Below are positions 7,527 to 64,000 of a stretch of DNA of 64,000 nt, piece by piece. The DNA comes from Basidiobolus meristosporus CBS 931.73 (lineage: Eukaryota > Fungi > Basidiobolomycota), in the NCBI GenBank assembly GCA_002104905.1, contig MCFE01000213.1, positions 62,001 to 126,000 on the forward strand, read 5' to 3'. A program made the position numbers and the translations under genes. Each line of letters opens with the position of its first letter. Position 1 is the stretch's first letter. The notes under the pieces are model-generated. The model saw nothing but the letters and a program-made list of their open reading frames with translations. It ran no database searches and had not been told where the DNA came from.

Positions 7527-8055
7527 TGTCATGATCACATGACAACCATGAACACCCATGCCAAGTTTCAGCTTCCCAGCTCAATTTCTAAGAGATTCCT
7601 TCCGGAACCTTCTACCACCTTCCAGAAAGTTCCTGACCATTCCAAACCATTGTTACACAATGGAACATTCCATGGAAGCTTTCCATTGTATTTTTTATAG
7701 TCCAGTACCATATATGGAAATACCAGGTCACATGACTTAGTCACATGATCAGGTGACCCAATCCATTTCCCCATCCTGTCTCAGTACCGTGTCATCTATG
7801 TCATTATCCCCAGCACCATTGCTGTGCCTCACCCCACAACCCCATTAGTATTAGCTAACATCTCTCGGCATCAATATAGCCAAAAAGTATATATAGTCCT
7901 ATCCCCCCTTAAGTATTCCTCAGTCTGATAAACACAGGTCTTGAATAAACAGCCTTGCCTTGGAAATCTGTCTTGCCTTGTTGATCCACACCTAAGTCCT
8001 TTCCTTGTCCTGCCTTGCCTTGCTCTACTCTCCTGCCTTGTGTCTATTCATAACA
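7527..8055 (+). repeat. Chromovirus 5' LTR (TATA 7888-7895, inferred start site ~7922, AATAAA 7944-7949)
   Basis: TG...CA ends, near-identical to 12916-13444; TATATATA and AATAAA read directly. Confidence 0.95.
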
Positions 8056-8057
8056 GT

Positions 8058-8068
8058 TTTATCAGACT
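8058..8068 (+). promoter_or_regulatory. Self-priming primer-binding site (non-tRNA, Tf1-like)
   Basis: TTTATCAGACT is the exact reverse complement of AGTCTGATAAA at 7922-7932, 34 nt after the TATA start. No TGG tRNA-type PBS is present. Confidence 0.8.
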
Positions 8069-8118: not shown

Positions 8119-8438
8119 CTTGTAAAAGGAATACTCACCGTAAGTATCACCCATCATCTTTCCCTAGTCTTGTCCTATAAAGGCAAAGATACTTTATCTT
8201 TGTAAAACTATTGGTCAAAGCTGCATTCACTTTATTACCCTGCTGGTGGAGTTTACAGTTGTTACAGTATTGGAAGCTTTAGTACAATACTCTATCAAAG
8301 GACGTTGAAACCAGTACCTTCTGAAGTGACGCTAACTTATTTAAGTTGGGGATTGTGGCTCAATAGTTGTATTCTTGACATACTAGTGGCTTTACAAACC
8401 CACAACCTAGTTTAGTATATTCCAGTATTCCTTGCAAG
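8119..8438 (+). ncRNA. Candidate structured cis-acting leader RNA (also present in Gypsy-C U5)
   Basis: Identical blocks of 26, 17, 15, 15, 11, 10 and 9 nt shared in the same order with the reverse complement of 25349-25676, 55497-55824 and 62174-62501. The ends pair (AAGGAATACT/AGTATTCCTT). Function unknown. Confidence 0.65.
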
Positions 8439-8461: not shown

Positions 8462-9394
8462 ATGTCCAACCTAGAGCTGAACTTTGCCCAGCTCATGGCT
8501 GCCTTTACCCAACTGCAGCAAGACCATGCAGACCTCAGAAACACTCTTGCTCAGTTCCAGAACCAAAGTGTCCAGCAAACTAGCCAGGTCCCAGTCTACC
8601 AAGAACCCAAGTATACTCCTGCTACCAAGTTCAATGGCTCTCAGAATGAATTCCGTGGCTTCATCAACATGGTGAAGAACAACCTTGCACTCCAGCCCAA
8701 CCGGTACCCCACTGACCAGGCCAAAGTTGGTTTCATCTCCAACCTGCTTACTGGTACAGCTCTCAAGTGGTTCTCCCCATTAGTGGAGACCAACTCTCCC
8801 CTACTCAGAGACTACCAAGCCTTTCTCACTGAAATGGAGCTAACATTTGGTAACCTTGACCAAGCCAGAACTGCTGCCAACAAGATCAAGACCCTCAAGC
8901 AAGGGAACAAGCCAGCATCAGTCTATGCCTCAGAATTCCGACAACTCTCCAGTGACCTCAGCTCCTGGGGTCAAGCAGCCTTGATTAGCCAATTTCAAGA
9001 TGGCCTCAATGATGAAGTTTGTGATCTGCTACTCACACTCCCAGATCCGGATACATTGGTTGAAGCTATGCACCAAGCAATCCGGTGTGATAACAGACTA
9101 TTCCAGAAGAAGCAAAAGAACCGTCAAAGACACATTCCTGTTGCATTCCCAGCTCCTCCTGCTCCCCAAGTCACTCCAGAAGATCCTATGCAGATTGATA
9201 GTGCCAAATACAAGAAACTATCAAAGAGTGAAAAGTCCAGACGTCAACAAGCCAACCTCTGTCTATACTGTGGCCAACCAGGTCACTTTGCCAAGTCCTG
9301 CCCCAACAAGAAGTCCAGCTTCAAGCTGATGCAGTCCTCCAGCAACCAACCTGATCCAGATCTGTTGGGAAACTCCAATGTCCAGTTGCACTGA
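8462..9394 (+). CDS. gag: Chromovirus Gag (PEG10/sushi-like capsid with CCHC zinc knuckle), 310 aa
   Basis: ATG at 8462; capsid-like [12 protein letters not shown]...[23 protein letters not shown]; zinc knuckle [14 protein letters not shown]. Confidence 0.95.
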
Positions 9395-9487
9395 CAGGCT
9401 TGCAACTGGACCCACCCATGAAAATCCAGCATATCCAAGAATCTTCCTTTGCCACAAAATCTATCCAGTCCTTGAGAATGCCTGTCA
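9367..9487 (+). promoter_or_regulatory. -1 programmed ribosomal frameshift signal
   Basis: G GGA AAC at 9367-9373 in gag phase; 7-nt spacer; perfect 10-bp stem 9381-9390/9401-9410; loop TGACAGGC complementary to GCCTGTCA at 9480-9487. Confidence 0.85.
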
Positions 9488-12400
9488 AAATCCAGATCCC
9501 TGACTCTGGTCCTGTCCCAGCCCTAGCTCTGATTGATTCCGGTGCTTCATCCTGTTTCATTGACCAAGCCTTTGTCCAGAAGCACTCTATTCCTGTTACC
9601 TTGAAATCCTGTCCAGTCCAAGTAGAAGTTATTGATGGAAGATCACTCTCCTCTGGTGCCGTTACCCATGAAACATGCTTACTCCAGCTGTCCAGTACTG
9701 CCCACCAAGAAAGAATTGCCTTCAACATCATCAACTCACCACACTATCCTATTGTGCTTGGAAGCTCATGGTTGAGCTACCACAATCCGAGTATTGATTG
9801 GAAATCCAAGATCCCGTCATTCACCAGATCCCACCAAGTCAACTCCATGAAATCTCCAGACCCTGATAACCGTGAAAAGACGGTTGCCAACAGTTCAACA
9901 GCCCAAGATACCTTGCCAGCTGAAGGAGCCCCCTCAGCAACTATACCAGCCAAGTACCAAGAGTTTGCCCATGTCTTTGACAAGAAGAAAGCAGAACTCC
10001 TCCCTGACCATTGGCCTTATGACTGCCCTATTGACCTTGAAGATGGAAAAGTCCCTCCATTTGGCCCAATATATAACCTCTCCCAGCCGGAGTTGAAAGA
10101 ACTCCATGGTTATATTGAAGAAAACCTCCAGAAGGGTTTTATTCAGCACTCCAAATCACCTGCTGGAGCCCCAATCCTCTTTGTCAAGAAGAAGGATGGC
10201 ACCCTCAGAATGTGTGTGGACTACCGTGCTTTGAATAAGATCACAGTCAAGAACCGCTACCCCCTGCCCCTGATCAACACACTGTTGGATCAGCTATCTG
10301 CTGCCCAAGTCTTCACCAAGATAGACTTGAGAGGAGCTTACAATCTTGTCAGAATCAAGCCTGGTGATGAATGGAAAACTGCCTTTTGCACAAGATATGG
10401 TCACTTTGAGTACAAAGTAATGCCATTTGGCCTAACCAATGCCCCTGCTGTGTTTCAACACCTCATGAATGATATATTCCGTGAATACCTTGACCAGTTT
10501 GTGGTAATCTACCTTGATGATATTCTCATATACTCCAAGAGCCAAGATGAACATGATGAACATGTCAAGAAAGTATTGAGAAAACTAGACTCTGCCGGTC
10601 TCTATGCCAAGTTAGAGAAGTGTGAATTTGACCAGAGAGAAGTGGAATTCCTTGGTTATCTCATCAGCCCTGAGGGAACAAGAATGGACCCAAAGAAAGT
10701 TGACTCAGTCCAATCCTGGAAAACTCCAAGCTCAGTCAAGGAAGTACAATCCTTCCTGGGATTTGCCAACTTCTATCGCAGGTTCATAGCCAACTACTCC
10801 AAGATAGTCACCCCTCTGACAAAGCTTACCCAGAAGAACACACCTTTTGCCTGGAATGAGGAGCAATCCAGCTCATTCAACCAACTCAAGAAATCTTTCC
10901 TGAAGGCCCCCCTGCTTGCCCACCCTGACCTTGAGAAGCAATTCATAGTGGAGACTGATGCTTCGGATTTTGCCCTTGGTGCCATACTCTCCCAGTATGA
11001 TGAGGACAATGTGTTGCACCCCATTGCATTCTACTCTCGGAAGTTTTCCCCTGCAGAGATCAACTATGATATCTATGATAAGGAGTTGCTTGCCATCATT
11101 GTAGCCTTTGAGCAATGGAGACACTACCTGGACGGTGCAAAACACAAAATCAAAGTCTTCTGTGACCATAAGAACCTTGAGTACTTTGCAACTTCCAAAG
11201 TACTAAACCGGAGACAAGCCAGATGGTCACTCTTCCTGTCCAGCTTTGACTTTACTATCACCTATAGACCTGGTGCAAAGCAAGGAAAGCCTGATGCCCT
11301 GTCCAGAAAAAAGGAATATGCCCTGGAAGAGGGAGATGATGCCTGTCGGCAAATGGAACACCCATTGCTGAGCAAGAAACATTTTGAGATTCTTGCCACC
11401 CAGTCCTCAAGTCTTGTCATCCCTTCATTCCTAGTAAGGATATCAGAATCCCAAGCCTCTGATATGACTTCCAGCACCATCAAGAAATATCTGGAATCCC
11501 CAGTTGGGCCCCCTCCCAAGTTCCCAAACATCCAGAACCTGCATTTGGTAAACAACCTCATCTACCACAAGCAGCAGCTTTATGTCCCAGACCTTGCCAC
11601 CCAGCTAGACATCATTAAGTCTCGGCATGATTCAATGGCTGCAGGCCACTTTGGTACTGCCAAAACCTTGAATGCTATCAAAAGAGATTTCTGGTGGCCT
11701 AGAATGATAACTCTTATCAAAGAGTACATTCTGACTTGTGATATTTGCAACCGTGCAAAACCAGCCAGACACCAGCCCTATGGACTTCTTCAACCCCTGC
11801 CTATCCCAGAACACCAATGGAGATCTATATCTATGGACTTCATTACTGACCTCCCTGAGTCATGTGGCTTCAATGCTATACTTGTAGTGGCTGACCGGCT
11901 GACCAAGATGGCTCACTTTATCCCTTGCTGTAAGAACACTGATGCAAAAGAAACTGCTGCTTTAGTCCTGAAGAATATTTTCCGCCTTCATGGTATCCCC
12001 AGTGATATTGTGTCAGATAGAGGCCCACAGTTTGTGTCCAAGTTTTGGAAACACTTCATGCAATACCTTGGTGTTCAAGTCAAGCTCTCTACTGCCTTCC
12101 ATCCACAGTCTGATGGCCAGACTGAAAGAATCAACCAGATTCTAGAGCAATACCTCCGGTGCTATATCAATTATCAGCAAGACAATTGGGTTGATCTACT
12201 CCCCATTGCTGAGTTTGCCTACAACAACTCAAGCCATAGTGCAACCGGTTTTACACCATTCTATGCAAACTATGGATTCCACCCTCAGTTTGATATCCAG
12301 ATTCCAACAAACCCAATGAGCCCACATGCAGCTGAACATGCCCAAGCAATCCAGGACATCCAGAACACCCTCAAGGAAGAGCTATCCTTAGCTCAGGAAA

Positions 12401-12915
12401 GCTACAAGAAATTTGCCAATCTAAAACGGCATCCCAGCCCTGATCTTAATGAAGGAGATTCTGTATGGTTGCTCAGAAGAAACATCAGCACCAACCGCCC
12501 TTGTGACAAGTTGGATTTCAAGAAACTTGGTCCCTTCAAGATCAAGAAGAAGCTTAGCCCTATAGTATATCAGCTACAGTTACCAGCAAGTATGAAAATC
12601 CATGATACTTTCCATGTGTCCCTCCTGGAGCCGTATTGTAGGAACACATTGCCAAACCGGCAAGAAGCAAAGCCCCAAGCTATCCAGATTGACCAACATC
12701 AAGAATTTGAAGTTAAACAGATTCTAGACTCCAAGTATATCCGGTCAAAGCTGTACTACTTAGTAGACTGGATTGGTTATGGCCCAAGTGACCAAACATG
12801 GGAACCAGCTACACATCTCACTAATTGTCAAGAACTAGTTACCCAGTTCCACCAACAATATCCTGCAAAACCTGCCCCAAAGGGAAACAGAGCTCCGCCT
12901 GGAAGAGGAGAATAG
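9367..12915 (+). CDS. pol: Chromovirus Pol (protease, RT, RNase H, integrase, chromodomain), expressed by -1 frameshift
   Basis: Motifs: ALIDSGAS (PR), YLDDILIYS (RT), [16 protein letters not shown] (RH), H-H-C-C and DFITDLP...DRGPQF...E (INT), [15 protein letters not shown]...[17 protein letters not shown] (chromodomain). The frame is -1 to gag and open from the slippery site. Confidence 0.95.
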
Positions 12916-13444
12916 TGTCATGATCACATGACAACCATGAACACCCATGCCAAGTTTCAGCTTCCCAGCTCAATTTCTAAGAGATTCCTTCCGGAACCTT
13001 CTACCACCTTCCAGAAAGTTCCTGACCATTCCAAACCATTGTTACACAATGGAACATTCCATGGAAGCTTTCCATTGTATTTTTTATAGTCCAGTACCAT
13101 ATATGGAAATACCAGGTCACATGACTTAGTCACATGATCAGGTGACCCAATCCATTTCCCCATCCTGTCTCAGTACCGTGTCATCTATGTCATTATCCCC
13201 AGCACCATTGCTGTGTCTCACCCCACAACCCCATTAGTATTAGCTAACATCTCTCGGCATCAATATAGCCAAAAAGTATATATAGTCCTATCCCCCCTTA
13301 AGTATTCCTCAGTCTGATAAACACAGGTCTTGAATAAACAGCCTTGCCTTGGAAATCTGTCTTGCCTTGTTGATCCACACCTAAGTCCTTTCCTTGTCCT
13401 GCCTTGCCTTGCTCTACTCTCCTGCCTTGTGTCTATTCATAACA
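12916..13444 (+). repeat. Chromovirus 3' LTR
   Basis: 528/529 identical to 7527-8055. Confidence 0.95.
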
Positions 13445-23727: not shown

Positions 23728-26700
23728 TGTTGTAAAGATTTGTAATTCCACCTAAATATTCACCTTACATAGTCACTTAGACAATTACCCTCAAATCCTA
23801 GAGAATACTGACCAAATTCCTTATTGGGACTTACTTGGAATATTTTCACCAAAATACCAGGTACCCAGAACATGAAAATTCTCAAAGTTGTCCAAGCAGT
23901 CCCAAACTTTGCACACATGTTCTTGGGACCTTTCTTAACCTATTCTACATGGTTGTAATGCCAAGACAAGGTAAAAGTATAAATACCACTTTTATATTCA
24001 ATAAATCATTAAGTGAAAACTACACAATGTACTTGTTCTCCAAATCACTTCCAATATCTCCAAGACTGTTACAACAGGTTATGAGCCCTAAGCTGTCACT
24101 CTCTGCAATGTCTGCTACTGCTATAACTGGAATTTTTCCCTCTGCTCAAAAGCTGGATGGATCTAACTACCAAGTGAGGAAGGTGAAGATGGAGATGCTG
24201 CTACAAGAAAGAGGCCTTTAGGATATTGTCATGGGAGAAGAATGCCCTCCTAAATATATGGGAGAGGAAGCCTCAAAGTACCAGAAGAAAGAACAAAGTG
24301 CCTTTAACTGCATTTGCCTTAATGTTAAGGACAAATTGCTAATTCAATGCTCAAGAGCAAAAACGGCAAAGAATGCCTGGAAAGCATTAGAAAACACCTA
24401 CCAGTCATGTTCAGCTGCCAAGAAAATGTATCTGAGACAAAAATTCTTTACTACAAAGATGCTGCCAGGAGAAGAAATGAAAAATCTAATTAACAGAATT
24501 ACCCTGCTTGTAGATGAGATGGAATCTGTGGGCATACCAACTACTGATGAGGATGTGATAGTTACCATACTGAATAGTCTGACAGACAAGTTTCAGGGCC
24601 TTGTATCAGCCCTAGAGTCCAGAACTGAAGATTTGACCTTAAATTACGTATATGGAAGGCTCCTGGATGAAGAATTAAGAAAATCAAGTGCCAATAAGAA
24701 GGAAGAAGAAAATGCTTGAATAAGCAATGATAGCCAACAAAGGAGGTACCCAAGACCCTACAAAGGCAACAACAACCTGCTTTGTAACTACTGCAAAAGG
24801 AAAGGACACACATCAGACCAGTGTCTCAAAAAGAAAGATAATCAGCAAAAGAAGCCTGAATATGGAAATGCTGCAACAACTGAAGATAGACTATTCATAT
24901 CTGCACTAAATATGACCACAAACAGGGATTCTCAGATGTGGTATATTGACTCTGGAGCATCTCAACACTTTACACACCAAAAAGAACTTTTTACCAAATA
25001 TTAAGAAATTCCAATTAAGAAGGTTTTCATGGGTGACAATAGAACACTTGATGCAGTGGGAGAAGGAACTATTGAAGTAAGCCAATGAAGCAGTGAAGGA
25101 AGCCATACACTGACCTTTGAAGAAGTACTCTATGTACCAGAAATAGCCAAGAACCTACTCTCTGTAAGCAAGGCCACAGCAGAAGGACTCAGTTTCAGTT
25201 TTGACAATTCTGGTTGCAGGATCACTGATCAAAATGGTGCCCATATTGCGTTGTGGTGGTGTGTAAGTCCAAGGGAGAGATACGTCCAACACTTCTCAAG
25301 TGTTTTGAGTGTGGGGTGTTCACTGGGTGCAATAACCTCTGGCAAAAGCTTGCTAGGAATACTTGGGTTCTGTTTCTAATCTAATGTGAAGGGGAATAAA
25401 GCCACAAGCTTGTCAAGGGAAAACTATTGAGCTACAATCCCCAACTTAGTTGGCATCTTAACAAAAGTATGTGCTGGGTTCAGCGTCCTTTGAGATGACA
25501 ATGTACTAAAGCTTCCAAAGTCAAAACAACTGTAAACTCCACCAGCAGGGACTTGACAAGAATGCAGCTGTGGTCAATAGTTACAAAGACAGAAAAGTAT
25601 CTTTGCCTGTACAAGAACTAACTTGGGAAAGAATCAAATATAATAAAAGATACCTACTCTGAGTATTCCTCACAAGTAGTGCCTCCAAGGTCAGTTGGCT
25701 GTCAGCGCGGTTTCCTGGGAGTGTCCTGTGGTCTAGGGTTGGAAGTTCAGGTAGCAGCAGGTAGCAGTGATCACACTAATCAACAAGTCGGTATATTGAT
25801 AAAAGGGATGATGATTTATTGTTAAGGGATAGCCTCCCTTATATACTTTTCTCACTGGCTAAGTGATTACTAATCATAGTGTTCCAGAAGGTTCTGGAGA
25901 TCAATAGAAATCTTAATGACATCAGAATGACCTAAGAATGTTCTAAATAGGTGCCAAAAGGTTCTAAGAGGCACAGCACATCCAACCAATCAGGAATCAG
26001 TATTCTGAAACCTGTGTAACATGGGGATACCATATATGGTATGGAAATGGTAGGGATGGTGACACGGGCTGATCATGTGTAACGGGTACTGGCGCAGGTA
26101 CTTGCCTAATATAGAAGTACTTATAGCTAGTAATCTTACATAAAGTGAGGGGTAACTTATGCAATAAGGTAAGCAGGTGTGATAGTCAACCGGCTTATGG
26201 GATAGTACTGATTGGGTAAGACAAATGGGATAAAACTAAAATTAGTGTAGTAGAGATATAGGGAAATAGAAAATAAGGGAATGAGCACATCTGTCAGTGG
26301 GTGTCACTGTCACCCTACTACAGCATTGGGCATCAGAGATCAGAATCTATACAAGTTGACTTATATTCCATCATATCTGGAAGCCAATATAAGTAACTTA
26401 AATGAAGAAACACCAATGCTTTGGCACAGGAGATTTGGACACATCAATTTTGATTATTTGTGCAAAATGATCAAAGATCAGCTAATTTCTGGAGTGAAAA
26501 TTGATCCCCCAGCTAATTTGGAGCACTGTGAAGCCTGCATATATGGGATACAGGCCAGACAACCGTTCAAGAGCTCTGGGTTAATCAAAACTAAGAAAAA
26601 ATTAGATCTAATTCACTCAGATCTGTGTGGACCTATGCAAAATTTATCGTGAGGCAGGATGAAGTGTTTAATCATTTTATTGATGATTATACAAGATACA

Positions 26701-35242: not shown

Positions 35243-37810
35243 TGTTACCAGTCTTGGTAAAAGAGCTGTAGAGGAATAGGGAGTTTAGCTAGTATTGTGT
35301 TCATTAAAACTTGAACTGATTTTTATTGAGGTTACAGCAGCTGCTTATATACATTTAGCAGATCAATTGTTGACTAATTGCATTTCTCAATGTAGGTTGT
35401 GGCTGATGACTCATTTGATTGCATCATCATCACCCAATAAGATGCTACTTAATATATCTATTTCTGTCTGATGAGGATTTGCTTATTCATTTGCTGACTA
35501 ACACTACTTATCTGATAGCTAACTCTGATATAATGATAGGCTAAGCATATAACTAATTGATTTGACTAAAAACCAAACTGACTTGAACATTCAAGTGGTG
35601 GATCATAACATTCTCCCCTACTGAAGTTGAGAGGGTTCTCCTGAACTTCTTTTCATGTGATATCAATATCTTGATGGCTCAGTATTGTTGGCAAGTCTTG
35701 CAAGCCTAAGTCTGTCTCTATGAACTAAATCTTCCTGGATATTCCCTAGTTTGTTCACTAGTTGGTAAGTTGCAAATAGAAAATCTCTGATGATCTTAAA
35801 AGGCCCTGTCCATTGTGGCTCAAACTTCTTCCAAGTATAGTTTCTCAGCAATACAAAGTTCCCAACTGGCAATGATTCTGGTGATACAGTCTTATCACAT
35901 CTCTGCTTCATCTTTTCTGCACTTTGAGATACTTTGGCCTGTGCCTCTTGACTTCTTTGTTCCAGCTGCTGGTGTCTGCTTGACTGACTGAGTTCATCTT
36001 CTAAGGCACCTGTAAGCTTTGGTTGTGTGAGATCTCCTGGAATCCTTGTCTCCCATCCATACACTGAGTAAAATGGCAATTATTGGGTAGTGTTGTGTAC
36101 TCTAACTCTGCATGCAAAAAGTTCTTGGTTGATATACTCATCCCATCTACTGACTGCTCCATTTGCTTACTTGGTCAGCAGTTTTCCAAATAATTCATTA
36201 AATTGCTGGGTGACTCCATTAGTTCTAGGGTGATATGCTGAGGTTTTCAAGTATCTAATGTGCTGCATTTCCAGGTAAACTTTTAATGCCTTTGCCATAA
36301 AGTTTGCTCCACTATTGGATAGAATCTCTACAGGGCATCCAAGCTTGATAAGGATCTCATGGTAGATGAAACTTGCAACTTCTTGCTCACTGGCTACAGG
36401 TACTGCTTTAACCACTGGCCTTTTGCTTGCACAGTCAATTGCTATTAGGAACCAACGGTTGAATTTCCTGGTAGTTGGCAGTCTCCTAATGGAGTCAATT
36501 CTCCATCATTTAAATGGTCTTCCAGGCTCCAAGGGAAAGACTTCAGCAATTATCTGTGGTTGGCCTTAGTTGATTTGGCAATTTGGGCATGTTTTCACTA
36601 GCTGCTCAATGTCTTGTTTCATTTTGGACCATCATGCTCTGGCTCTCACAAGGCTGTAGGTTCCTTCAACTCCAAGATGTCCATATCCATTGTGTAGCTT
36701 ATGTATTAAATCCAGGTAAGCAACATAAGGGCAATAGGCTATAGGGCTTCCATCAACAATTTGGTAGAGTGTCTCATCCTGTACCACAAAATTGCTGGCT
36801 TCATCCCAGATTATCATTGTGATCTCATCATCCACTGCATTAGGAGCAGCTTGGTACTCCAAGTACTTTGGTAATAGGTTAGACCAATCTGATTCATGCC
36901 CCAAGTTGAGTTGTGCAACTTGTTCTAATCTTGGTAAGGCATCAGCAACCTTGTTATTTTTACCAGGGCAGTATACAATCTCCAATTCAAATTGCTGAAT
37001 GTATTCACTCCGTTTTATCATTCTTCTACAGAGTTCCTTCTGAGTAAATATATACTTGAGGGATGCATGATCAGTCTCAGTAGAGTAGAGGAATCCTTGT
37101 GTAATACTGCCATGAGCAACATCTGGGTGCCTTTTATAAGTGCTCTAAAGAACTGTGTCTTGCTAAGGTCACTTGTTGCACACATACTGGAATTGACCAA
37201 GTTGCAGCATGCAGGTAACAGCTCATAGGTCTTGTCCTTCTGGATCTGAGTAGCATGGGTTCTCCAGTTGACTGATAGATTACAACAAAATAGCAGGTTT
37301 GTTCAGGTATAAGGTCAAGCTTGCAGTTCCCAAATACTTAGGCCTGTAGGTCTTCTTCATAGTCATTGTACTTCATTCTTACTGGCTGAGTACCATGGTT
37401 GATTATGTGAGAGTTCCCATCAGCTCTTGAGACTAAAGTAGATTTGGTGAGTTTTGAGTTGATTCCAGTTTTCAAAGCAAATTGCTCTGACATGTACTCA
37501 TGCAATGCTCCTGATTCAATCATAATCTTGGCAGGTACTCCATGCGTTACTCCATTCAAATATAATAGCTCTCCTGAGTTGGAGGTTATCTGGGATAGGT
37601 ATTCTTCTATCACTTGGAAGTTGAGTTCTGAGTCTTCCTCATGTTCATCCTCCAAGTGACTATGCTCAAGGGCTTCAATACAGTTGAAGGTTCTTGATGG
37701 CTGGTGTCCATTTTTCTATGGGGGCAGTACTTTGCAATATGTCCCTGCTGAATACAATTGAAGCAAAGTCCTTTCTTCTTACATTCTTCTGAGGTAGGAT
37801 AATCTGAATT
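35243..37810 (-). mobile_element. Gypsy-B deletion derivative: gag knuckle, PR, RH end, INT, 3' LTR (35243-35610); RT missing
   Basis: CFNCIQQGHIAKYC; LYLNGVTHGVPAKIMIESGA; EIVYCPGKNNKVADAL; LHNGYGHLG; AYHPRTNG; QWTGPFKI. Confidence 0.85.
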
Positions 37811-53400: not shown

Positions 53401-56400
53401 AACAGTAGTGACCAATGAGTGGTCAAATATGACTAGGGTGGCAAAACACTGGCCATGATCCTTGTAATACTTCCTATGCTGTCTGCATGCTTCATGGCTG
53501 AGAGGCTTGCCACAATAGCCACATGGTTTTTTTTCTCTTCTCTTACAGCAATGAGTCAAAGAAGTCTTGTCCATGGGGTAAACAGTTTGATCTTCAACAA
53601 TGTAACGCTATTATATACTTTTTGGTCAATACTCATGTGAACTTAAGACAGTCCTGTATATGAGACATTTCACCAACATGATTGTGAGATTCAAAGATGA
53701 CCCGCCATATTAAGCATTACAAATAAAGATGTGGCACTACATATGCACATATATGTAACACTATTTCCCCTTTGGTTTGACTCACTTCCATATATATGCA
53801 GCCAAAAAAAACAGCAAACTTGTCTGGTTCTCAACCAAACCCCACTGCTGATGGCAACAGAAGAACAGCTGGACCACAGCTTGCTTTGACACTCAGTGCA
53901 ACAAGCAGGGCTACATCCAAAAAAGGGCATGTTGACAGTGTGCCCATTGAAGGTCATAATGCAGACTCCTCAGGCTCTCAGTCAAGTAGGCAATTGAGGA
54001 CCTCTGCGGAGCTGCAAGCTGACTGTTATGCTCTGGCATATGAGAATGTAGCAAAAGCAGTACCCTCAGTTGAAGATCAGCAAGTGGCCATGATAGCATC
54101 ACTACCACCCATATTAGGAAGTATGTTGTCAGCTCATACCAAAGCATTTATTACGCATTTAGGTGCAGTGGCTGATAGGATAGATGCAATGGCACAGAGA
54201 AATGAGGAAATAGTCCAGAAATAGGATGAGTAGATAATACATGTAGAGCAATCAATATCCCAGGTAGCAAAATCAATATCTTTGCTGCAAAGAAGGAGCT
54301 CAAGTAGCTTGATGTCACATCCAAGAATTGAGCCATTTCCCAACGTAACAGCAGAGGAACACCATACAGTCTTTGAAGCACAACAACAGTGCCCAAAGAT
54401 AAAGCCACAAAGAAACCTATCACAGCATGGGAGGAAAACAATATGGTGTTTATACCAAAGCCTAAGTATCAAAAGACATTGAAGATCCAAGAAGCCATTG
54501 AGTGCAATGAAGAAGAGTGGGCTAATATTAAAGAGACCTTTCAAAGCCTTACACACTAAGACCTTAACATTTATCAAGGAAAAAGCAAAGTGCCACTCAA
54601 GAAGCACCCAGTCAAAGTAGCAGTGAAGGACCTGGCAATGATAAAAACCAGTCACTTTTACAGGAGTCCATCACAACTATGGTTGAAAGCGCAAAACAAG
54701 CTGAAAAGAAATGTCAGGTTGCCAGAAGTGTGCCAGCAAGGGACAAGCAGGCCAAAACAGATGCGTCAGAGCAGAATTTATCCAGGAGAAAACGTGGTTC
54801 TTTACAAGAAGTACTCAGACAAAGTAGCAGTGAAAGACCTGGCAGTAATAAAGGAAAAGGTAAAGGGAAAAATGTCAACCAAAGCTTGAGACAGGGAGGC
54901 ACACAAAAAAAACTGCTGTTCTTGCCAATTAATGCTGCAAGACAGGAATAAACTGAATCTCATAATAGCCAAGAAGAATTACCAACTAGAAAACAGCTGT
55001 TTTTGCAAGAGTTGGAAGCACAGCCAGTTGAGCTATACTCCAGCAAGGTAGATGAGTTTGCTGAAAAAGGCAATTGGTCTACCACAGCATCCATAGCATC
55101 CACAGCATCCACAGCCTCCATTGTTGACAGAGTGGAGATCCCATTGACAGACAAGGCTACAACATCAAGAGCTTGAAAGACTATTGCAATGTCTTCAGTG
55201 GAGTTTTGGAACATCAATATGGACACCAAGAGGTAGCAGCACTTATTCAAGAGCAGTGCTCAAGAAAATGCACTGGAATATTGCAAGGATATATTGCAAC
55301 AACTGGCAGATGAGGAGCTAGACCTTGCAGTGCTGGCTGAAGACCAGGATATGTGGAAACCAGTGAATGAACAGTAGCATAAAGCTGTTGGGCTCCCACT
55401 GTGGTGGTGTATAAGTCCAAGGGAGAGATATGTCCAACACTTCTCAAGTGTTTTGTGTGTGGGGTGTTCACTGTGTGCAATAACCTCTGGCAAAAGCTTG
55501 CTAGGAATACTTGGGTTCTGTCTCTAATCTAATGTGAAGGGGAATAAAGCCACAAGCCTGTCAAGGGAAAACTATTGAGCTACAATCCCCAACTTAGTTG
55601 GCGTCTTAACAAAAGTATGGGCTAGGTTCAGCGTCCTTTGAGATGACAATGTACTAAAGCTTCCAAAGTCAAAACAACTGTAAACTTCACCAGCAGGGAC
55701 TTGATAAGAATGTAGCTGTGGTCAACAGTTACAAAGACAGAAAAGTATCTTTGCCTGTACAAGAACAAACTTGGGAAAGAATCAAATATAATAAAAGATA
55801 CCTACTCTGAGTATTCCTCACAAGTAGTGCCTCCAAGGTCAGTTGGCTATCAGCACAGTTTCCTGGGAGTGTCCTGTGGTCTGGGGTTGGAAGTTCAGGT
55901 AGCAGCAGGTAGCAGTGATCACACTAATCAACAAGTCAGTATATTGATAAAAGGGATGATGGTTTATTGTTGAGCGATAGCCTCCCTTATATACTTTTCT
56001 TACTGGCTAAGTGATTACTAATCATGGTGTTCCAGAAGGTTCTGGATATCAATAGAAATCTTAATGACATCAGAATGACCAAAGAATGTTCTAAGTAGGT
56101 GCCAGAAGGTTCTAAGAGGCACCGCACATCCAACCAATCAGGAATCAGTATTCTGAAACCTGTATAACATAGGGATACCATATATGGTATGGAAGTGGTA
56201 AGAATGGTGGCACGGATTGATCATGTGTCACAGGTACTGGCACGGGTACTTGCCTAATATAGAAGCACTTATAGCTAGTATTCTACATAAAGTGAGGGGT
56301 AACTTATGCAATAAGGTAAGCAGGTGCAATAGTCAACTGGCTTATGGGATGGTACTGATTGGGTAAGACAAATGGGATAAAACTAAAATAAATGTAGTAG

Positions 56401-56971
56401 AGATATAAGGAAGTAGAAAATGAGGGAATGAGCACATCTGTCAGTGGGTGTCACTATCACCCCACTACACCGCCAAAGTTGTGGAGCCAGAGTGTTACAG
56501 CAGAAATACTAATTGAGTGGTGGATTTTAATGGAATTACTTGTTGAGTGTGGGGTTAGGCTTAATGTTAGTGTACGGTATGGAGAATTGTATAGGTCAAT
56601 ACAATTGGCAATTGAGGTACAACAGAAGTTTCATGGAAATAAATAAATTTGTACACATCAAAAGGACGTGAAACAGTTGAGTTAGGAAGTAAGAAGTGTG
56701 AAAAAGAGGCAATAGCCAATTAATTCACACAAATGAAGGAAGCAATAGAGTGTCCAGGATCAGAAAGTGAGTAAATTGGCAGGGAAGCAATCAAAAGCCA
56801 CTTATATTGTTGTGATGAAAAATTTTGACTAGGTTTTTTGTCAAATATAGGATGCAATAATTTTTCAACAGTCTCTGTATTGTGTCCTGACAGAATCAGT
56901 ACCTTGTAGTCATGGGACTCTACCTTTGCGACTGCCTTTTGACTGGATTATCCCAATAATTTCTCATAGGG
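50406..56971 (-). mobile_element. CACTA/EnSpm copy C, both TIRs present (transposase ~50790-53636 minus; ORF2 53796-56646 plus, split by a solo LTR)
   Basis: TIRs CCTCATGAAAAATAATTTGG (50406-50425) and reverse complement CCCTATGAGAAATTATTGGG (56952-56971), 15/20 match; flanks do not give a clean TSD. Confidence 0.87.
55400..56469 (-). mobile_element. Gypsy-C solo LTR (1070 bp) in CACTA ORF2
   Basis: Homologous to 62077-63147; 4-bp TSD CCAC (55396-55399) / CCGC (56470-56473). Confidence 0.92.
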
Positions 56972-59900
56972 TATGGCAGCCTATAGCTAGTTTGGTACAA
57001 TACTACCATACCAATTTACCAAATGGTATTTCCTTTTTCCACCCCTCCTTGTGCAATATATATATTCCACTGTAAAATCACCCCTCTTTATTTGCTTACT
57101 CACTACTACCTTGGGTATCTCACATATAGTTTGAGTCAAAGAAACTATGGCCTCCTGCTTACTAACTGCTACTAACATATGCACCTGCCTCAATTGACAT
57201 ACTTATATCACCTCAACTTTATGGCTATTTAGTGTTATACAAGCCAAGTTGCCATATACCTTGTACTACTGGTAGCATATACATGTTGTAAACATATGCT
57301 TGGTTGCCACCACTTCTGCCATAAATACCTCCTGAATATCTGCAAAGAACTTTTTGGTATTTAGCCAATATAATCCTTCTTCCTGCTGAACTGTAGTCTC
57401 ACTTATAGGTGCACTCTGGCTCATGTTTGTGTGAACTCTGTATCAAATGGTGTAGAAGCTGGCTTGTAAACAGGAGAAATCTGGCATACCTTGGTAGAGT
57501 TTTCCTAATAAGTGCTTCTTGCTTGTTGCATCCAACCCAGCATTGCATTGTTTAATTGATAACCTATGCTTTGGAGCTGCTTAGCTTCTTAATGCCATAG
57601 GCATAGGTGTCTCCAAGTGCACATTGGTCCTCAGTATTTTCTAAATATCTCTGGCTGTCCTCCATATGCCAACTTATCACATCCATGATGGACTTAAAGG
57701 TAATATTCTTGAAGAGACTGGGATATGGCAGTACCTGCAACCTGACTGATCTTCCTATCTCCCCACACACCTGCTCCATAGGAAACTCCCAAAAGGTGAA
57801 TCAAGGCCCAATATTCTCCACACCTAGCAAGATGGAGTAGAGAATGGTTACAGTAGAAGTAGAGATCTACATGTTCAGCTTTATGTTGATACTATTACCA
57901 CTCAAATCCTATAACAAACTCCTTGCACAACAGGTGTTGATGTGTCAAGTTGGCATTGGTAATCTGCTTCTAGATATATATTCCTACAATGTTCACCTGT
58001 GACTCCCAATACTTCCAATGTACTCTTGGTAGAAATGGCTTCAGATTGCTTCTTGAACAAATACATATCCAACTCATCCAGTCTATGCATTTTTATTGTT
58101 CAAATATGTATGAACTTTGATTGGAGCCTGTGAGAAGTACTTAGGGTAGCAGATACTTGGTAATATCTTGCCAAATCTTTCAAATATCTCTACTATCTCA
58201 AAGGGTACATTTGGCTCCATGTACAACTTGGACATCAGTATATGGATATTTTTGAAAAGCAAACCCATTGCTCCCAGTGGAAAGCTATTGCTCCAAAATA
58301 TACTCTCTATCATAAGTATCTCTGATTCCCAACTAAATCCATAATCTGTCCAATGGCTTATATCTTGCCAGCTTTGCTGCAATTGGATGCTGACTTCTGT
58401 ACATACTCTCTATGTGAAGATGATGCTCTTGGCATTAGTGTTTAGGTAATAATAATGTGTGTGAGTTTTGGAGTACATCCCCTGTATCTCCCACATTTGA
58501 CAGCAATACCATCCACTGCGCCAAGAAATGCAGGCTATCTTGCTGATTGCTGGGGTATCTCCAAAACAGATAATAATATGAACTTTTACAAGACAGCCAT
58601 CCACTTTTATCTCATTGGAATGCAGACAAATTCATCCACTAATGGATACATGTAGCTATCCAGGTTGGATGGTAATTTAGGCACAGATACAAGTGAGACT
58701 ACCATCAGATTTTTGCTCTGATACAGGGGCCAGCAGGATTTGCTGGTAAAGTACTTGTTTAATGAGAATCCATCAAGTGCTAAAGTAAAGGCATGGTCAT
58801 GCATACCTACAAAGTAGCCCTTGCTTTTTAGCTTTTGTAATGTTTGCCATCAAATATATTGGGTATGTTTGCGCTTGATTGATACTGAGTGTGGTACTTT
58901 CTAGCTTTGCAATATTTGTTGGACTGCATGAGCTTCTTTAAATAGGGTGTTACCGGATTATATCCAGAGTGGGAACACTGCTTTCCCTCAATGATGGTGG
59001 TATCCTGATAATTTGGACATGTTGCAATGGTAGCATTTGTGGATGTGAATGCCATGCAACTGTTGACACACACTGGAATCAGGACAGTCTCTAGGTCATA
59101 TGTTGCCAGCTGCATGACAGTTGTTCACTTGTACCATGTACATGGTAAGCTACATCCTGGAATGCTTTTGGTAAGAAATAGTAGTAAAACCTCAAAGCCC
59201 TGATTTCTGATTTTAGTGGAAATATGCCACTTCTCCAGCCACAAAATTACATCATTCACCAGTAGATGTATTACTGGGCTCACTTGGCTTGATGAAGTAT
59301 CCTTGCATTTCTTTCAACTGGGGTTGTCTCATTGCATATTGGGATTTGACCAGGGTCATGTGTGGTACTGCTTTTAGGGGAGAGATGCTTGCAAGCCATC
59401 AGTGAGCCTTCTTTGTCAGAGCTATCACTCTGCATGCCATATTCAGAAGGCTGAGGTGAGCCTCAAGGTGTCACAAACTTGCCTGATTCAGTTTGCATAA
59501 GGTTACAAAGACAGCCAGGTGCCAATATAGAAGTATCAACTGGCTGGCATGTAATGTTGGTACAGTGTGACTGATGAATGGTCAAATATGACTTGTGTGG
59601 CAAAACACTGGCCATGATCCTTGTAATACTTCCTATTCTGTCTGCATGCTTAATGGCTGGGGGGGCTTGCTATAATAGCCACATGGTCTTTTTTCTCTTC
59701 TCTTATGGTGTTGAATCAAAGTAGTCTTGTCCATGGGGTAAACAGTTTGACACTCAACAACATAATGCTATTATGTTACTTTTTTGTCAATACTCATGTG
59801 AATTTAAGACAGTCTTATATTTGAGACATTGCACCTACATGAATGTAAGATTCAATGATGACATGCCATAGTAAGCATTATAAATAAAGATGTGGCACAA

Positions 59901-61707: not shown

Positions 61708-62076
61708 CCCTATGAAAAATAATTTGGTCCTACAGGTAGATTCAATCCAGATCAGCCATCAGGATCTTGTTTAGAGACTGTGATAATACCAGCAGCTTGG
61801 AATTAGCAACCCTCCTAACAATCTTATGATGGATCATGACAGTGTTTTGCAAATTTGACAAGCAAATAAAGGGACAAAACATGACAATATTTTATGGGTG
61901 CTGTGACAATATTTGCATGGTATTGTTGCGGTCTTTTGGTGCTCTATAACTATTTTAAGTGGAGCCAATTGGCCAGGATATCCAATTGCCTTATATGGCT
62001 AGAAACTTGATGGTATTTTGATGACCTCACTGCAACACTCTGATAGCATTATACTGGCAGTATGATGGTCCACCAC
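61708..62076. mobile_element. CACTA copy F terminal fragment (transposase-side TIR)
   Basis: CCCTATGAAAAATAATTTGG at 61708-61727; colinear with 50406-50770; cut by the Gypsy-C LTR. Confidence 0.8.
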
Positions 62077-64000
62077 TGTGGTGGTGTATAGGTCCAAGGG
62101 AGAGATACGTCCAACACTTCTCAAGTGTTTTGTGTGTGGGGTGTTCACTGGGTGCAATAACCTCTGGCAAAAGCTTGCTAGGAATACTTGGGTTCTGTCT
62201 CTAATCTAATGTGAAGGGGGATAAAGCCACAAGCTTGTCAAGGGAAAACTATTGAGCTACAATTCCCAACTTAGTTGGCGTCTTAACAAAAGTATGTGCT
62301 GGGTTCAGCGTCCTTTGAGATGACAATGTACTAAAGCTTCCAAAGTCAAAACAACTGTAAACTCCACCAGCAGGGACTTGATAAGAATGCAGCTGTGGTC
62401 AATAGTTACAAAGACAGAAAAGTATCTTTGCCTGTACAAGAACAAACTTGGGAAAGAATCAAATATAATAAAAGATACCTACTCTGAGTATTCCTCACAA
62501 GTAGTGCCTCCAAGGTCAGTTGGCTGTCAGCGCGGTTTCCTGGGAGTGTCCTGTGGTCTAGGGTTGGAAGTTCAGGTAGCAGCAGGTAGCAGTGATCACA
62601 CTAATCAACAAGTCGGTATATTGATAAAAGGGATGATGATTTATTGTTGAGGGATAGCCTCCCTTATATACTTTTCTCACTGGCTAAGTGATTACTAATC
62701 ATGGTGTTCCAGAAGGTTCCGGAGTTCAATAGAAATCTTAATGACATCAGAATGACCTAAGAATGTTCTAAGTAGGTGCCGGAAGGTTCTAAGAGGCACA
62801 GCACATCCAACCAATCAGGAATCAGTATTCTGAAACCTGTGTAACATGGGGATACCATATATGGTATGGAAATGGTAGGGATGGTGACACGGGTTGATCA
62901 TGTGTCACGGGTACTGGCGCGGGTACTTGCCTAATATAGAAGCACTTGTAACTAGTAATCTTACATAAAGTGAGGGGTAACTTATGCAATAAGGTAAGCA
63001 GGTGTGATAGTCAACCAGCTTATGGGATAGTACTGATTGGGTAAGACAAATGGGATAAAACTAAAATGAGTGTAGTAGGGATATAGGGAAGTAGAAAATA
63101 AGGGAATGAGCACATCTGTCAGTGGGTGTCACTGTCACCCCACTACATCCACCCCCCTCTCAGCTTTGAACTTGGGTCAAAGCAAACTAATCTTGATGTG
63201 CAAAATTCCTATGCTTGAATAACTTAAGTCGATTTCCAGCAACTGGTGCTCTCAACTGGGTGTTGTCAAGCTCAGATATGTAATAACTTCCATTTCCAAT
63301 CACTTTGGAAATGAGGTAGGGGCCAGTCCTTTTGTTGTCAAACTTCCGACTCCATTGCTTGTCCAAGGTAGAATCATAGAGTAATACTGGGTCTCCTAGT
63401 GATAGTGGTTTTGGCCTTGTTGGGTGTGATTTGTCAAAGGGCACCTTGTTCTTTAGTCGTGTGTCCTTAAGTTGTTCAGCAGCTCTGCTAATATTGAAGT
63501 CATGGTGATCAAGTTGCTGTATGCGAGTTGCAAGGAGGTCTTCAGTCTGCATATCGGATCTCCAATTCAATGAGTTCCAAGTGACTGTGTTTAACTCAAC
63601 TGGTAGTATGCAGTCATGTCCATAGAGTAGCTTGAATGGCAATAATCCAGTTGTTCTCTTGGTAGTAATTCTATCTGCCCAGAGTGCAAGATGTAATTGC
63701 TATGGCCACAGTGTTGTGTTATTCTCACAGGCCTTGACAAGAGAGTTCACCAATGGTCCATGTCCTCTCTCTATCATTCCATTGGCTTGAGGGTGGTAAG
63801 CTGTTGTGAAAGCTATGTGTATCTTGTACTTTGAGCACAACTCCTGGATCATTTGGGATGTCATCTCTCCTCTGTCAGCAACAAACTGTCGGATGCAGCC
63901 AAATCTGCAGATGATGTCTTCAAGTATAAATCTCCATATGGTATGGCTCTTGTTGTTGGGCAAGGCTCGAGCCTCCACCCATCCACTAAGGTCATCTCTA
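62077..64000 (-). mobile_element. Gypsy-C (non-chromoviral Ty3/Gypsy): 3' LTR 62077-63147, PPT and integrase; continues beyond the window
   Basis: PPT GAGAGGGGGGTGGA abuts TGTAGTGGGG; minus-strand TATATAAGGG at 62670-62661 and AATAAA near 62645; left flank CCAC. Confidence 0.92.
63187..64000 (-). pseudogene. Gypsy-C integrase core and C-terminus, with one in-frame TAG at 63700-63702
   Basis: EARALP...FVADRGE...TAYHPQANGMIERGH...LWP*QLHLALWADRITTKRTTG..PFKLLYG...TGPYLI...GSYYISELD. Confidence 0.88.

What the first reader, a model, noticed from the sequence alone, without database searches (positions are those of the whole stretch)
8119..8438. Candidate undescribed ~320-nt structured leader RNA shared by two different Ty3/Gypsy lineages
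Seen: the chromovirus 5' UTR (ending 24 nt before the gag ATG) and the U5 of Gypsy-C (minus strand of 25349-25676, 55497-55824, 62174-62501) share ordered identical blocks with dissimilar spacers, while the rest of the two LTRs and the integrases show no nucleotide similarity by eye. The blocks are AGGCAAAGATACTTT, CCCTGCTGGTGGAGTTTACAGTTGTT (26 nt), TTGGAAGCTTTAGTACA, TCAAAGGACG, TAAGTTGGGGATTGT, GCTCAATAGTT and GTGGCTTTA. Both versions can form: a ~15-bp closing stem (CTTGT..AGGAATACT with AGTATTCCT..GCAAG); A(A/G)GTATC with GATACTT; AACTATTG(G/A) with TCAATAGTT; a hairpin with different loops (CTAACTT-ATTT-AAGTTGG versus CCAAC-TAA-GTTGG); and a possible pseudoknot TGT(C/T)CT with AGGACG. 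Both carry GTA(A/G)GTATC just inside the closing stem, TAG(T/A)TTAG near the 3' end, and a palindrome of different sequence at the same place (ACTAGT versus ACAAGCTTGT). Two GACG CpGs survive in both families despite the strong CpG decay. Inference: a selected RNA module in the 5' part of both transcripts, moved between lineages or anciently conserved. Options are a packaging/dimerisation signal inside a 5'-UTR intron (unspliced RNA packaged, spliced RNA translated), an IRES, or a catalytic RNA. I do not recognise it as a known family.
Basis: partly seen in the sequence, partly recalled or inferred. Interest (0 to 1): 0.9.

Follow-up and report, generated by a model that had tools for sequence, protein, structure and literature searches.

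The report
Shared structured leader RNA of fungal retrotransposons
Two unrelated jumping-gene families of a Basidiobolus fungus carry the same ~320-base stretch near the start of their transcripts, and it folds into an RNA shape kept by matching mutations, so it is probably a new control signal of unknown job.

Summary
Window 8119-8438 (+) aligns with three minus-strand copies (25349-25676, 55497-55824, 62174-62501) at about 75% identity. Identity is block-wise, not uniform (longest identical run 26 nt, P=0.005).

- **Location.** In the Tf1-type self-priming chromovirus the module lies after the primer-binding site. In an unrelated, chromodomain-less Gypsy element it lies inside the 1071-bp LTR, probably in U5.
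- **More copies.** I found three further chromovirus copies on public contigs (L001, L002, L011; Gag down to 51% identity).
- **Structure.** A covariance model built without L002 and L011 finds both (E 2e-16, 7e-21). Of 40 modelled pairs, 15 change on both sides, against 0-3 in slid controls, and 92.8% of cells pair.
- **Strand and use.** G·U pairs favour the sense strand. The leaders hold no ATG (0 of about 8 expected), so the module stays in a scanned mRNA.
- **Known families.** Rfam gives nothing.

My reading is a selected, portable cis-acting RNA domain. Its function is untested; a Gag-recognised packaging or dimerisation signal is my best guess. An intron is a live rival, because no RNA runs were listed. 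IRES and ribozyme readings lack support.

First readers noted the same module on at least six other pieces of this genome. None was followed up.

The parts
8119..8438 (+). Whole shared module in the chromovirus leader (after the PBS, 23 nt before the gag ATG)
   Evidence: Alignments A1/A2; BLAST
8119..8135 (+). 5' arm of closing stem H1 (CTTGTAAAAGGAATACT)
   Evidence: 15 pairs with 8424-8438; 14 pairs in L001 and Gypsy-C; no 3' partner in L002/L011
8140..8148 (+). Splice-donor-like GTAAGTATC (GTAGGTATC in Gypsy-C; not kept in L002)
   Evidence: Alignment A2; matches the U1 complement through +8 (own knowledge of U1 5' end)
8162..8389 (+). Conserved core domain, helices H2-H11 (three-way junctions, long irregular rod)
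   Evidence: core present in five lineages
8184..8202 (+). Hairpin H3 CAAAGAT-ACTTT-ATCTTTG; variable loop; A-U to G-C swap in L011
8220..8359 (+). Apical domain (H5-H11) modelled by covariance model R1
   Evidence: 15 of 40 pairs with compensatory change, 92.8% paired
8238..8263 (+). 26-nt near-invariant block CCCTGCTGGTGGAGTTTACAGTTGTT, including the unpaired purine-rich UGGA/GGUGGAG
8266..8291 (+). Hairpin H10: stem differs in four lineages, loop GAAGCUUUAGUA (8273-8284) conserved
   Evidence: 7 of 8 pairs with both-side change
8408..8415 (+). TAGTTTAG, possible 3' splice-site region (only in the WIN/L001/Gypsy-C sublineage)
   Evidence: Alignment A2
8424..8438 (+). 3' arm of closing stem H1 (AGTATTCCTTGCAAG)
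62174..62501 (-). Module copy inside the Gypsy-C 3' LTR (LTR positions ~646-973)
55497..55824 (-). Module copy inside a second Gypsy-C LTR
25349..25676 (-). Module copy inside a third Gypsy-C LTR
62077..63147 (-). Gypsy-C LTR (TGTAGTGG...CACCACA), TATATAA at 62670-62664, AATAAA at 62645-62640; preceded by a polypurine tract and the integrase ORF
63190..63999 (-). Gypsy-C integrase C-terminal part (rve core, one internal stop, no chromodomain; 24% identical to the chromovirus integrase)
7527..8055 (+). Chromovirus 5' LTR (3' LTR at about 12916-13444, 99.8% identical)
7922..7932 (+). Predicted transcript 5' end AGTCTGATAAA, 26-34 nt after the TATA box, complementary to the PBS (Tf1-type self-primer)
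   Evidence: Sequence
8058..8068 (+). Primer-binding site TTTATCAGACT, 11-nt complement of 7922-7932
   Evidence: Sequence
8462..9394 (+). gag (Ty3 capsid-like, one CCHC zinc knuckle at residues 267-280)
9400..12915 (+). pol (protease, RT, RNase H, integrase, chromodomain)

Best explanation
The module is a cis-acting, sense-strand structured RNA domain of the genomic-RNA leader.

**Shown.**
- A ~230-nt core of about ten helices is conserved in a clade of Tf1-type self-priming chromoviruses (window copy, L001, L002, L011). The stems co-vary. A few loops and internal loops are almost invariant: the GGUGGAG bulge region, the apical loop GAA(G)CUUUAGUA, and UCAAAGGAC.
- One sublineage added a ~15-bp closing stem, with a splice-donor-like GUARGUAUC just inside it.
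- The same unit, in the same orientation and with homology ending exactly at the closing stem, sits in the LTR of an unrelated, chromodomain-less Gypsy element. It lies downstream of that LTR's TATA box and AATAAA.
- The module stays in an ATG-free leader.

**Inferred.**
- The module sits in U5 of the Gypsy LTR.
- The leader is a scanned mRNA leader.
- The unit moved once between lineages as RNA, by reverse-transcriptase template switching. Such switching pauses at the base of stable stems and keeps orientation.
- The module most likely marks the full-length RNA for the element's own use. My best guess is recognition by the zinc-knuckle Gag for packaging or dimerisation. The donor-like site may act as a U1-binding site.
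For: - **Homology and blocks:**
- **Independent lineages:** L001, L002 and L011. Their Gag proteins form a starred clade with the window's.
- **Out-of-sample test of the structure:** model R1 was built only from WIN, L001 and Gypsy-C. It scores L002 at 73.6 bits and L011 at 91.2 bits, and nothing else in 105 kb.
- **Covariation:** 15 of 40 pairs change on both sides against 0-3 in slid controls. 92.8% of cells pair against 30-43%. No shuffle of 500 reaches the observed values. RNAalifold recovers H5, H6, H7, H10 and H11 on its own. The basal helices H2-H4 also show swaps.
- **Strand:** 26 G·U cells, so 92.8% of cells pair on the sense strand against 83.5% on the antisense strand.
- **Retained in a scanned mRNA:** 0 ATG in the 541-nt WIN leader (expected 7.6, P=5e-4). 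0 ATG in the 396-nt L002 leader. 0 ATG in the 564 nt from the Gypsy-C TATA box to the LTR end.
- **Constraint:** the module is 90% identical between WIN and L001 against 81% for gag. The core is 68% identical between WIN and L002 against 60% for gag.
- **Gag:** it carries a CCHC zinc knuckle.
Against: - No expression, start-site, splicing or probing data could be obtained.
- Only five independent lineages are available, so no formal R-scape-type significance can be given. The alignment used for counting was fitted to the model.
- Single-sequence folding is only slightly better than shuffles (z -1.9 and -1.4).
- H8 and H9 never vary, and RNAalifold draws them differently.
- One pair in H7 is A·C in L002 and L011, and one pair in H2 is U·U in L002.
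- The AAGCUU palindrome in the apical loop is missing in L002 and L011. That weakens a kissing-loop dimerisation reading.
- The module sits on opposite sides of the PBS in the two families, which is unusual for a packaging signal.
- The direction of transfer is not resolved.
Confidence: 0.55

Rival explanations
1. The module is a structured spliceosomal intron of the 5' UTR. The closing stem brings GUARGUAUC and UAG(U/A)UUAG together. Spliced RNA is translated, and unspliced RNA keeps the structured core.
For: - A 9-nt donor-like block is conserved in an otherwise variable stretch just inside the 5' arm.
- UAG/UUAG lies just inside the 3' arm.
- CUAAC/CCAAC lies inside.
- The stem, the donor-like site and the acceptor-like site co-occur in the same sublineage.
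Against: - L002 and L011 keep the core but have no 3' extension and no good donor.
- The module is ATG-free, like the rest of the leader. That is not expected of sequence that is always removed.
- At about 270-290 nt it would be long beside the 76-nt host intron reported nearby (not checked).
- The branch-like motif lies 70-90 nt from the candidate acceptors.
Confidence: 0.17
2. The module is a portable element that recruits a host factor (export, stability, translation control or escape from silencing). It works with any retrotransposon, which is why an unrelated lineage kept it.
For: - It works in two contexts with different Gag/Pol, different priming and a different position relative to the PBS.
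- The invariant unpaired motifs suggest a specific binder.
Against: - No candidate factor or known motif was found. Rfam gives nothing.
- The Gypsy-C copies here are decayed, so selection in that lineage is not shown.
Confidence: 0.13
3. The module is a miniature inverted-repeat or foldback DNA transposon that landed in both elements and rides along neutrally.
For: - 15-bp terminal inverted repeats mark exactly the limits of homology.
- The overall shape is rod-like.
Against: - No target-site duplication flanks it (sequence).
- No free-standing copy turns up in 64 kb of transposon-rich DNA, even with filters off.
- Compensatory changes, conservation above that of gag, ATG depletion and sense orientation in every copy all argue against it.
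Confidence: 0.07
4. The module is an internal ribosome entry site or a self-cleaving ribozyme.
For: It is a large multi-helix fold next to the gag AUG in the chromoviruses.
Against: - The leaders are wholly ATG-free, as expected for scanning.
- The distance to the AUG varies: 0-30 nt in the chromoviruses, and beyond the LTR end and PBS in Gypsy-C.
- No ribozyme family matches even at E up to 10.
- No conserved hammerhead-type core is visible by eye.
Confidence: 0.05

Closest known systems
Retroviral 5' leader packaging/dimerisation domains (HIV-1 SL1-SL3, MLV Psi) - from my own knowledge
   Same: Sense-strand multi-helix domain between the transcript start and gag. Exposed G-rich unpaired motifs (GGUG/GGAG-like). 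A splice-donor-like site sits in the same region. The partner Gag has a CCHC zinc knuckle.
   Different: No sequence or model similarity. Gag binding is untested. The loop palindrome is not conserved. The module lies upstream of the PBS in one family and downstream in the other. It is shared by two unrelated lineages.
Ty1 and Ty3 cis-acting leader RNA structures and the Tf1 self-priming fold (own knowledge; Tf1 context in PMC4600332 and PMC5341516, listed)
   Same: Fungal LTR-retrotransposon leaders with functional RNA structure. The host chromovirus shows the Tf1-type 11-nt self-primer/PBS complementarity.
   Different: The module is separate from, and downstream of, the self-priming fold. 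Tf1 has no comparable long leader. Relatives L003 and L004 lack it.
Cassandra TRIM elements, with a 5S-rRNA-derived module in the LTR, and retrozymes, with hammerheads in the LTR (own knowledge)
   Same: A discrete structured-RNA module sits inside an LTR.
   Different: No cellular RNA or ribozyme source was detected (Rfam and ARAGORN negative).
Mosaic LTR retrotransposons made by template switching between co-packaged RNAs (e.g. BARE-1/BARE-2; own knowledge; BARE RNA pools in PMC3735527, listed)
   Same: Sense-oriented exchange of non-coding leader or LTR sequence between elements.
   Different: Here the partners are different Gypsy lineages (integrases 24% identical), and only a stem-bounded unit was exchanged.
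Fungal introner-like elements / MITEs (own knowledge)
   Same: Stem-bounded ~300-nt unit with GU...AG-like ends and terminal inverted repeats.
   Different: No duplications and no free copies in the window. Strong covariation and ATG depletion.

Membership tests
Any Rfam 15 family | Covariance-model match at or near the gathering score | tested here: not met
   0 hits at gathering score in the window. Only chance hits at E of 1 or more for the WIN, Gypsy-C, L001, L002 and L011 versions.
Spliceosomal intron | Conserved 5' splice site GURNGU | tested here: inconclusive
   GUAAGUAUC in WIN and L001, GUAGGUAUC in Gypsy-C, but GUUAAGUCC in L002.
Spliceosomal intron | Conserved branch point and 3' splice site | tested here: inconclusive
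   UAG(U/A)UUAG is present in WIN, L001 and Gypsy-C. The whole 3' extension is absent in L002 and L011.
Spliceosomal intron | Exon-exon junction in RNA | not testable with these tools
   No RNA run was listed for this stretch.
MITE / foldback DNA transposon | Terminal inverted repeats | tested here: met
   14-15 of 15 positions are complementary.
MITE / foldback DNA transposon | Target-site duplication | tested here: not met
   The flanks of the WIN, L001 and Gypsy-C copies share no direct repeat.
MITE / foldback DNA transposon | Free-standing copies outside retrotransposons | tested here: not met
   Only the four leader/LTR copies in 64 kb with filters off. The whole genome was not searchable.
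Retroelement packaging/dimerisation leader element | Sense-strand location between transcript start and gag | tested here: met
   Positions relative to TATA box, PBS and ATG. ATG-free leaders. The transcript start is inferred, not mapped.
Retroelement packaging/dimerisation leader element | Conserved secondary structure | tested here: met
Retroelement packaging/dimerisation leader element | Self-complementary loop for kissing dimer | tested here: inconclusive
   AAGCUU is in the apical loop of WIN, L001 and Gypsy-C but absent in L002 and L011.
Retroelement packaging/dimerisation leader element | Specific binding by Gag/NC and requirement for packaging | not testable with these tools
   Only the presence of a CCHC knuckle in Gag is shown.
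tRNA-derived SINE / tRNA-like element | tRNA fold | tested here: not met
   ARAGORN finds no tRNA in the window. The GGGGAUUGUAGCUCAAUAG resemblance to a tRNA 5' half is by eye only.
IRES | Cap-independent initiation | not testable with these tools
   Indirect only. The total lack of upstream ATG fits scanning.

The most novel reading that the evidence does not exclude
The module is a self-contained, stem-bounded RNA that has been passed horizontally between unrelated retrotransposon lineages because it carries a transferable function. One version: it is a packaging tag that lets the Gypsy-C RNA enter chromovirus particles (cross-lineage parasitism). Another: it is a structured leader intron that sorts transcripts into translated (spliced) and packaged (unspliced) pools.
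Probability: 0.2. Interest if true: 0.8.

Novelty: new variant of a known kind. Interest (0 to 1): 0.6.

Why it matters
Cis-acting RNA signals of fungal LTR retrotransposons are known in detail only for Ty1, Ty3 and Tf1. This would add a covariation-supported RNA family from an early-diverging fungus.

It is also a rare case where one discrete RNA domain is shared by two unrelated Gypsy lineages at different places relative to the primer-binding site. That makes it a natural experiment on which leader functions are portable. It also gives a handle on RNA-level recombination between retrotransposon families.

The covariance model gives a direct way to census the element in fungal genomes.

Tried and rejected
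**Searches that found nothing useful**
- RNA evidence: the look-up of sequencing runs listed no run.
- Metagenome scans: the 20-mer gave 0 hits. The two-block pattern gave one contig, L010, which the model rejects, so it is a chance match.
- Viral and prokaryote genome collections: 0 hits.

**Relatives without the module**
- Gag and Pol relatives L003 and L004 have short leaders without the module.
- L005 and L006 have long, ATG-free leaders of unrelated sequence.
- L007 starts inside gag.
- L012 has no module.
- Relatives of the Gypsy-C integrase (L008, L009; about 50% identical) have no module.
- The DNA between the Gypsy-C LTRs at 56470-62072 has no pol similarity.

**Readings I dropped**
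- tRNA-like reading: ARAGORN negative.
- AAGTATC/GATACTT helix and TGTYCT/AGGACG pseudoknot: not kept in L001 or L002.
- K-turn and hammerhead cores, checked by eye: absent.

**Weak or unresolved**
- Thermodynamic z-scores of single sequences are too weak to count as evidence.
- The direction of transfer could not be rooted. Gypsy-C is the closest sequence to every chromovirus version and shares the 3' extension with WIN and L001.

Full report
**What is there.**
- Window 8119-8438 (+) and the minus strands of 25349-25676, 55497-55824 and 62174-62501 align over their whole length. BLAST gives 74-75% identity over about 245 nt.
The 26-mer occurs four times, against none in 100 shuffles.
- Identity is clumped. 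For WIN against the 62-kb copy the longest identical run is 26 nt (P=0.005), and 127 nt lie in runs of 9 or more (P<2e-4).
- Homology begins at CTTGT and ends at GCAAG. These are the two arms of a 14-15-bp inverted repeat.

**Context, chromovirus.**
- The first host element is an intact chromovirus. Its LTRs are 7527-8055 and about 12916-13444, 99.8% identical.
- gag is 8462-9394 and carries one CCHC knuckle. pol is 9400-12915 and ends in a chromodomain.
- Directly after the 5' LTR lies TTTATCAGACT (8058-8068). It is the exact complement of AGTCTGATAAA (7922-7932), which sits 26-34 nt after the TATA box. This is the Tf1 type of self-priming.
- The module therefore lies after the primer-binding site, in a 541-nt leader.

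**Context, Gypsy-C.**
- The second host is a 1071-bp LTR present three times: 63147-62077, 56469-55396 and 26322-25252 on the minus strand.
- The 62-kb copy is preceded by a polypurine tract and an integrase ORF. The ORF has an rve core and no chromodomain, and it is 24% identical to the chromovirus integrase. This is a different Gypsy lineage on the same strand as the module.
- The module occupies LTR positions about 646-973, some 140 nt downstream of TATATAA and AATAAA. It is therefore probably in U5. That is inferred, not mapped.

**Relatives elsewhere.**
- A Gag search and contig look-ups gave L001 (Gag 80% identical), with a complete module.
- They also gave L002 (Gag 51%), with a diverged module.
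- A search from the L002 Gag gave L011 (62% to L002). That contig starts inside the module.
- The Gag proteins of WIN, L001 and L002 form a well-supported clade.
- Other relatives have either short leaders (L003, L004) or long leaders of unrelated sequence (L005, L006).
- In L002 and L011 the gag ATG follows the core directly. The 3' arm of the closing stem and the UAG..UUAG stretch are missing.

**Structure.**
- RNAalifold on the window copies and L001 proposed a closing stem, a basal helix, a hairpin and a long branched rod.
- I fixed an apical-domain structure (H5-H11, 40 pairs) on WIN, L001 and the three Gypsy-C copies only, and built model R1 from it.
- R1 then found L002 (73.6 bits, E 2e-16) and L011 (91.2 bits, E 7e-21). 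It found nothing else in the window or in ten other loci, even with filters off.
- On the seven-row alignment, 92.8% of cells form standard pairs, against 30-43% when partners are slid. 15 of 40 pairs show changes on both sides, against 0-3. No shuffle of 500 reaches the observed values.
- The alignment is fitted to the model, which favours the structure. But L002 and L011 played no part in deriving it.
- RNAalifold run freely on that alignment recovers H5, H6, H7, H10 and H11.

**The clearest helices.**

| Helix | WIN | L001 / Gypsy-C | L002 | L011 |
|---|---|---|---|---|
| H10 | AGUAUUG/CAAUACU (also L001) | UGACUUUG/CAUUGUCA (Gypsy-C) | CUUGAUUAAA/UUUAAUCAAG | UGAUCAA/UUGAUCA |
| H6 | UCACUU/AAGUGA | UCUUA/UAAGA | CCU/AGG | CCU/GGG |

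- The four H10 stems all close the same loop, GAA(G)CUUUAGUA.
- H11, H5, H3, H2 and H4 each show at least one swap or a redesigned helix.
- H8 and H9 never vary and remain unproven.
- Blemishes: an A·C pair in H7 of L002 and L011, and a U·U pair in H2 of L002.

**Strand and use.**
- 26 cells are G·U. The fold therefore pairs 92.8% on the sense strand and 83.5% on the antisense strand.
- The leaders are free of ATG:
  - 0 in 541 nt for WIN (7.6 expected, P=5e-4);
  - 0 in 396 nt for L002;
  - 0 in the 564 nt from the Gypsy-C TATA box to the LTR end (8.2 expected);
  - 0 in the unrelated 630-nt and 814-nt leaders of L005 and L006.
- This fits a leader that ribosomes scan. It argues that the module is present in the translated RNA. 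It weakens the IRES reading and the reading of an intron that is always removed.
- The module is also better conserved than gag. It is 90% against 81% identical between WIN and L001. The core is 68% against 60% between WIN and L002.

**What it is not.** Rfam gives nothing at gathering scores and only chance hits at E of 1 or more for all versions. ARAGORN finds no tRNA. No target-site duplication flanks the module.

**How it probably works.**
- Shown: it is a conserved, co-varying, sense-strand fold in the leader, and it is shared by two lineages with homology ending at a stem.
- Inferred: it is a cis-acting signal of the full-length RNA.
- The near-invariant unpaired GGUGGAG region and apical loop, together with a zinc-knuckle Gag, make Gag recognition (packaging or dimerisation) my first guess, at roughly one in three.
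- The AAGCUU loop palindrome is not kept in L002 or L011, so a kissing-loop role is doubtful.
- The donor-like GUARGUAU matches the U1 5' end through +8 (own knowledge). It occurs only in the sublineage that has the closing stem. It may be a real splice donor, or a U1 site that suppresses the promoter-proximal AAUAAA. Neither could be tested.
- The sense orientation and the stem-bounded limits fit template switching by reverse transcriptase between co-packaged RNAs. The direction is unresolved. The Gypsy-C version is the closest to every chromovirus version (80%, 77% and 72%) and shares the 3' extension with WIN and L001. That fits capture from that branch by an element whose copies then decayed slowly.

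**Earlier notes.** First-stage readers recorded the same module on at least six other pieces of this genome, and the self-priming signal many times. None was followed up. The organism name (Basidiobolus) comes from one such note, and I did not check it.

**Verdict.** The function is open. I found no described family that matches (Rfam, and three literature searches).

Noticed in passing
window 7922-7932 and 8058-8068: An exact 11-nt complementarity links the predicted transcript 5' end and the sequence just after the 5' LTR. This is Tf1-type self-priming with no tRNA primer site. L001, L002, L004, L005 and L006 show the same ACAGTTT(G/T/A)A... PBS type.
   Followed up: partly
L005:60-690 and L006:80-894: Related chromoviruses from other metagenomes have 630-nt and 814-nt leaders after the PBS with not one ATG. 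Their sequence is unrelated to the module. Long, scanned, probably structured leaders may be a general trait of this group.
   Followed up: partly
window 55396-63147: The 62-kb Gypsy-C LTR has a polypurine tract and integrase upstream, so it is a 3' LTR. Yet DNA downstream of it (61501-61718) resembles DNA downstream of the 55-kb LTR (55033-55268). The 5.6 kb between the two LTRs has no pol similarity, only a weak Transposase_21 hit at 58607-58804. This could be a tandem or nested arrangement rather than one element.
   Followed up: partly
L001:352-489 versus window 8220-8359: L001 matches the Gypsy-C version, not its close relative WIN, in both arms of helix H6 and the spacers beside them. 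It matches WIN in helix H10. Either WIN replaced both arms together, or patches were exchanged between modules.
   Followed up: partly
window 8242/8315 equivalents in L002:193-348 and L011:36-185: The second pair of helix H7 is G-C in Gypsy-C, G·U in WIN and L001, and A·C in both L002 and L011. This may be a tolerated or protonated A·C pair.
   Followed up: no
window 7944-7949 and 62640-62645: In both elements AATAAA lies within about 25 nt of the predicted transcript start, so the 5' copy of the poly(A) signal must be ignored. The donor-like GUARGUAU lies 165-195 nt downstream in both.
   Followed up: no
window 9392-9400: The gag stop codon (9392-9394) is followed within a few bases by the pol ORF in the -1 frame. 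How pol is expressed (frameshift or other) was not examined.
   Followed up: no
window 35759-37072 (-): A further Gypsy pol fragment, 24% identical to the chromovirus pol, belongs to another element of this transposon-rich window.
   Followed up: no
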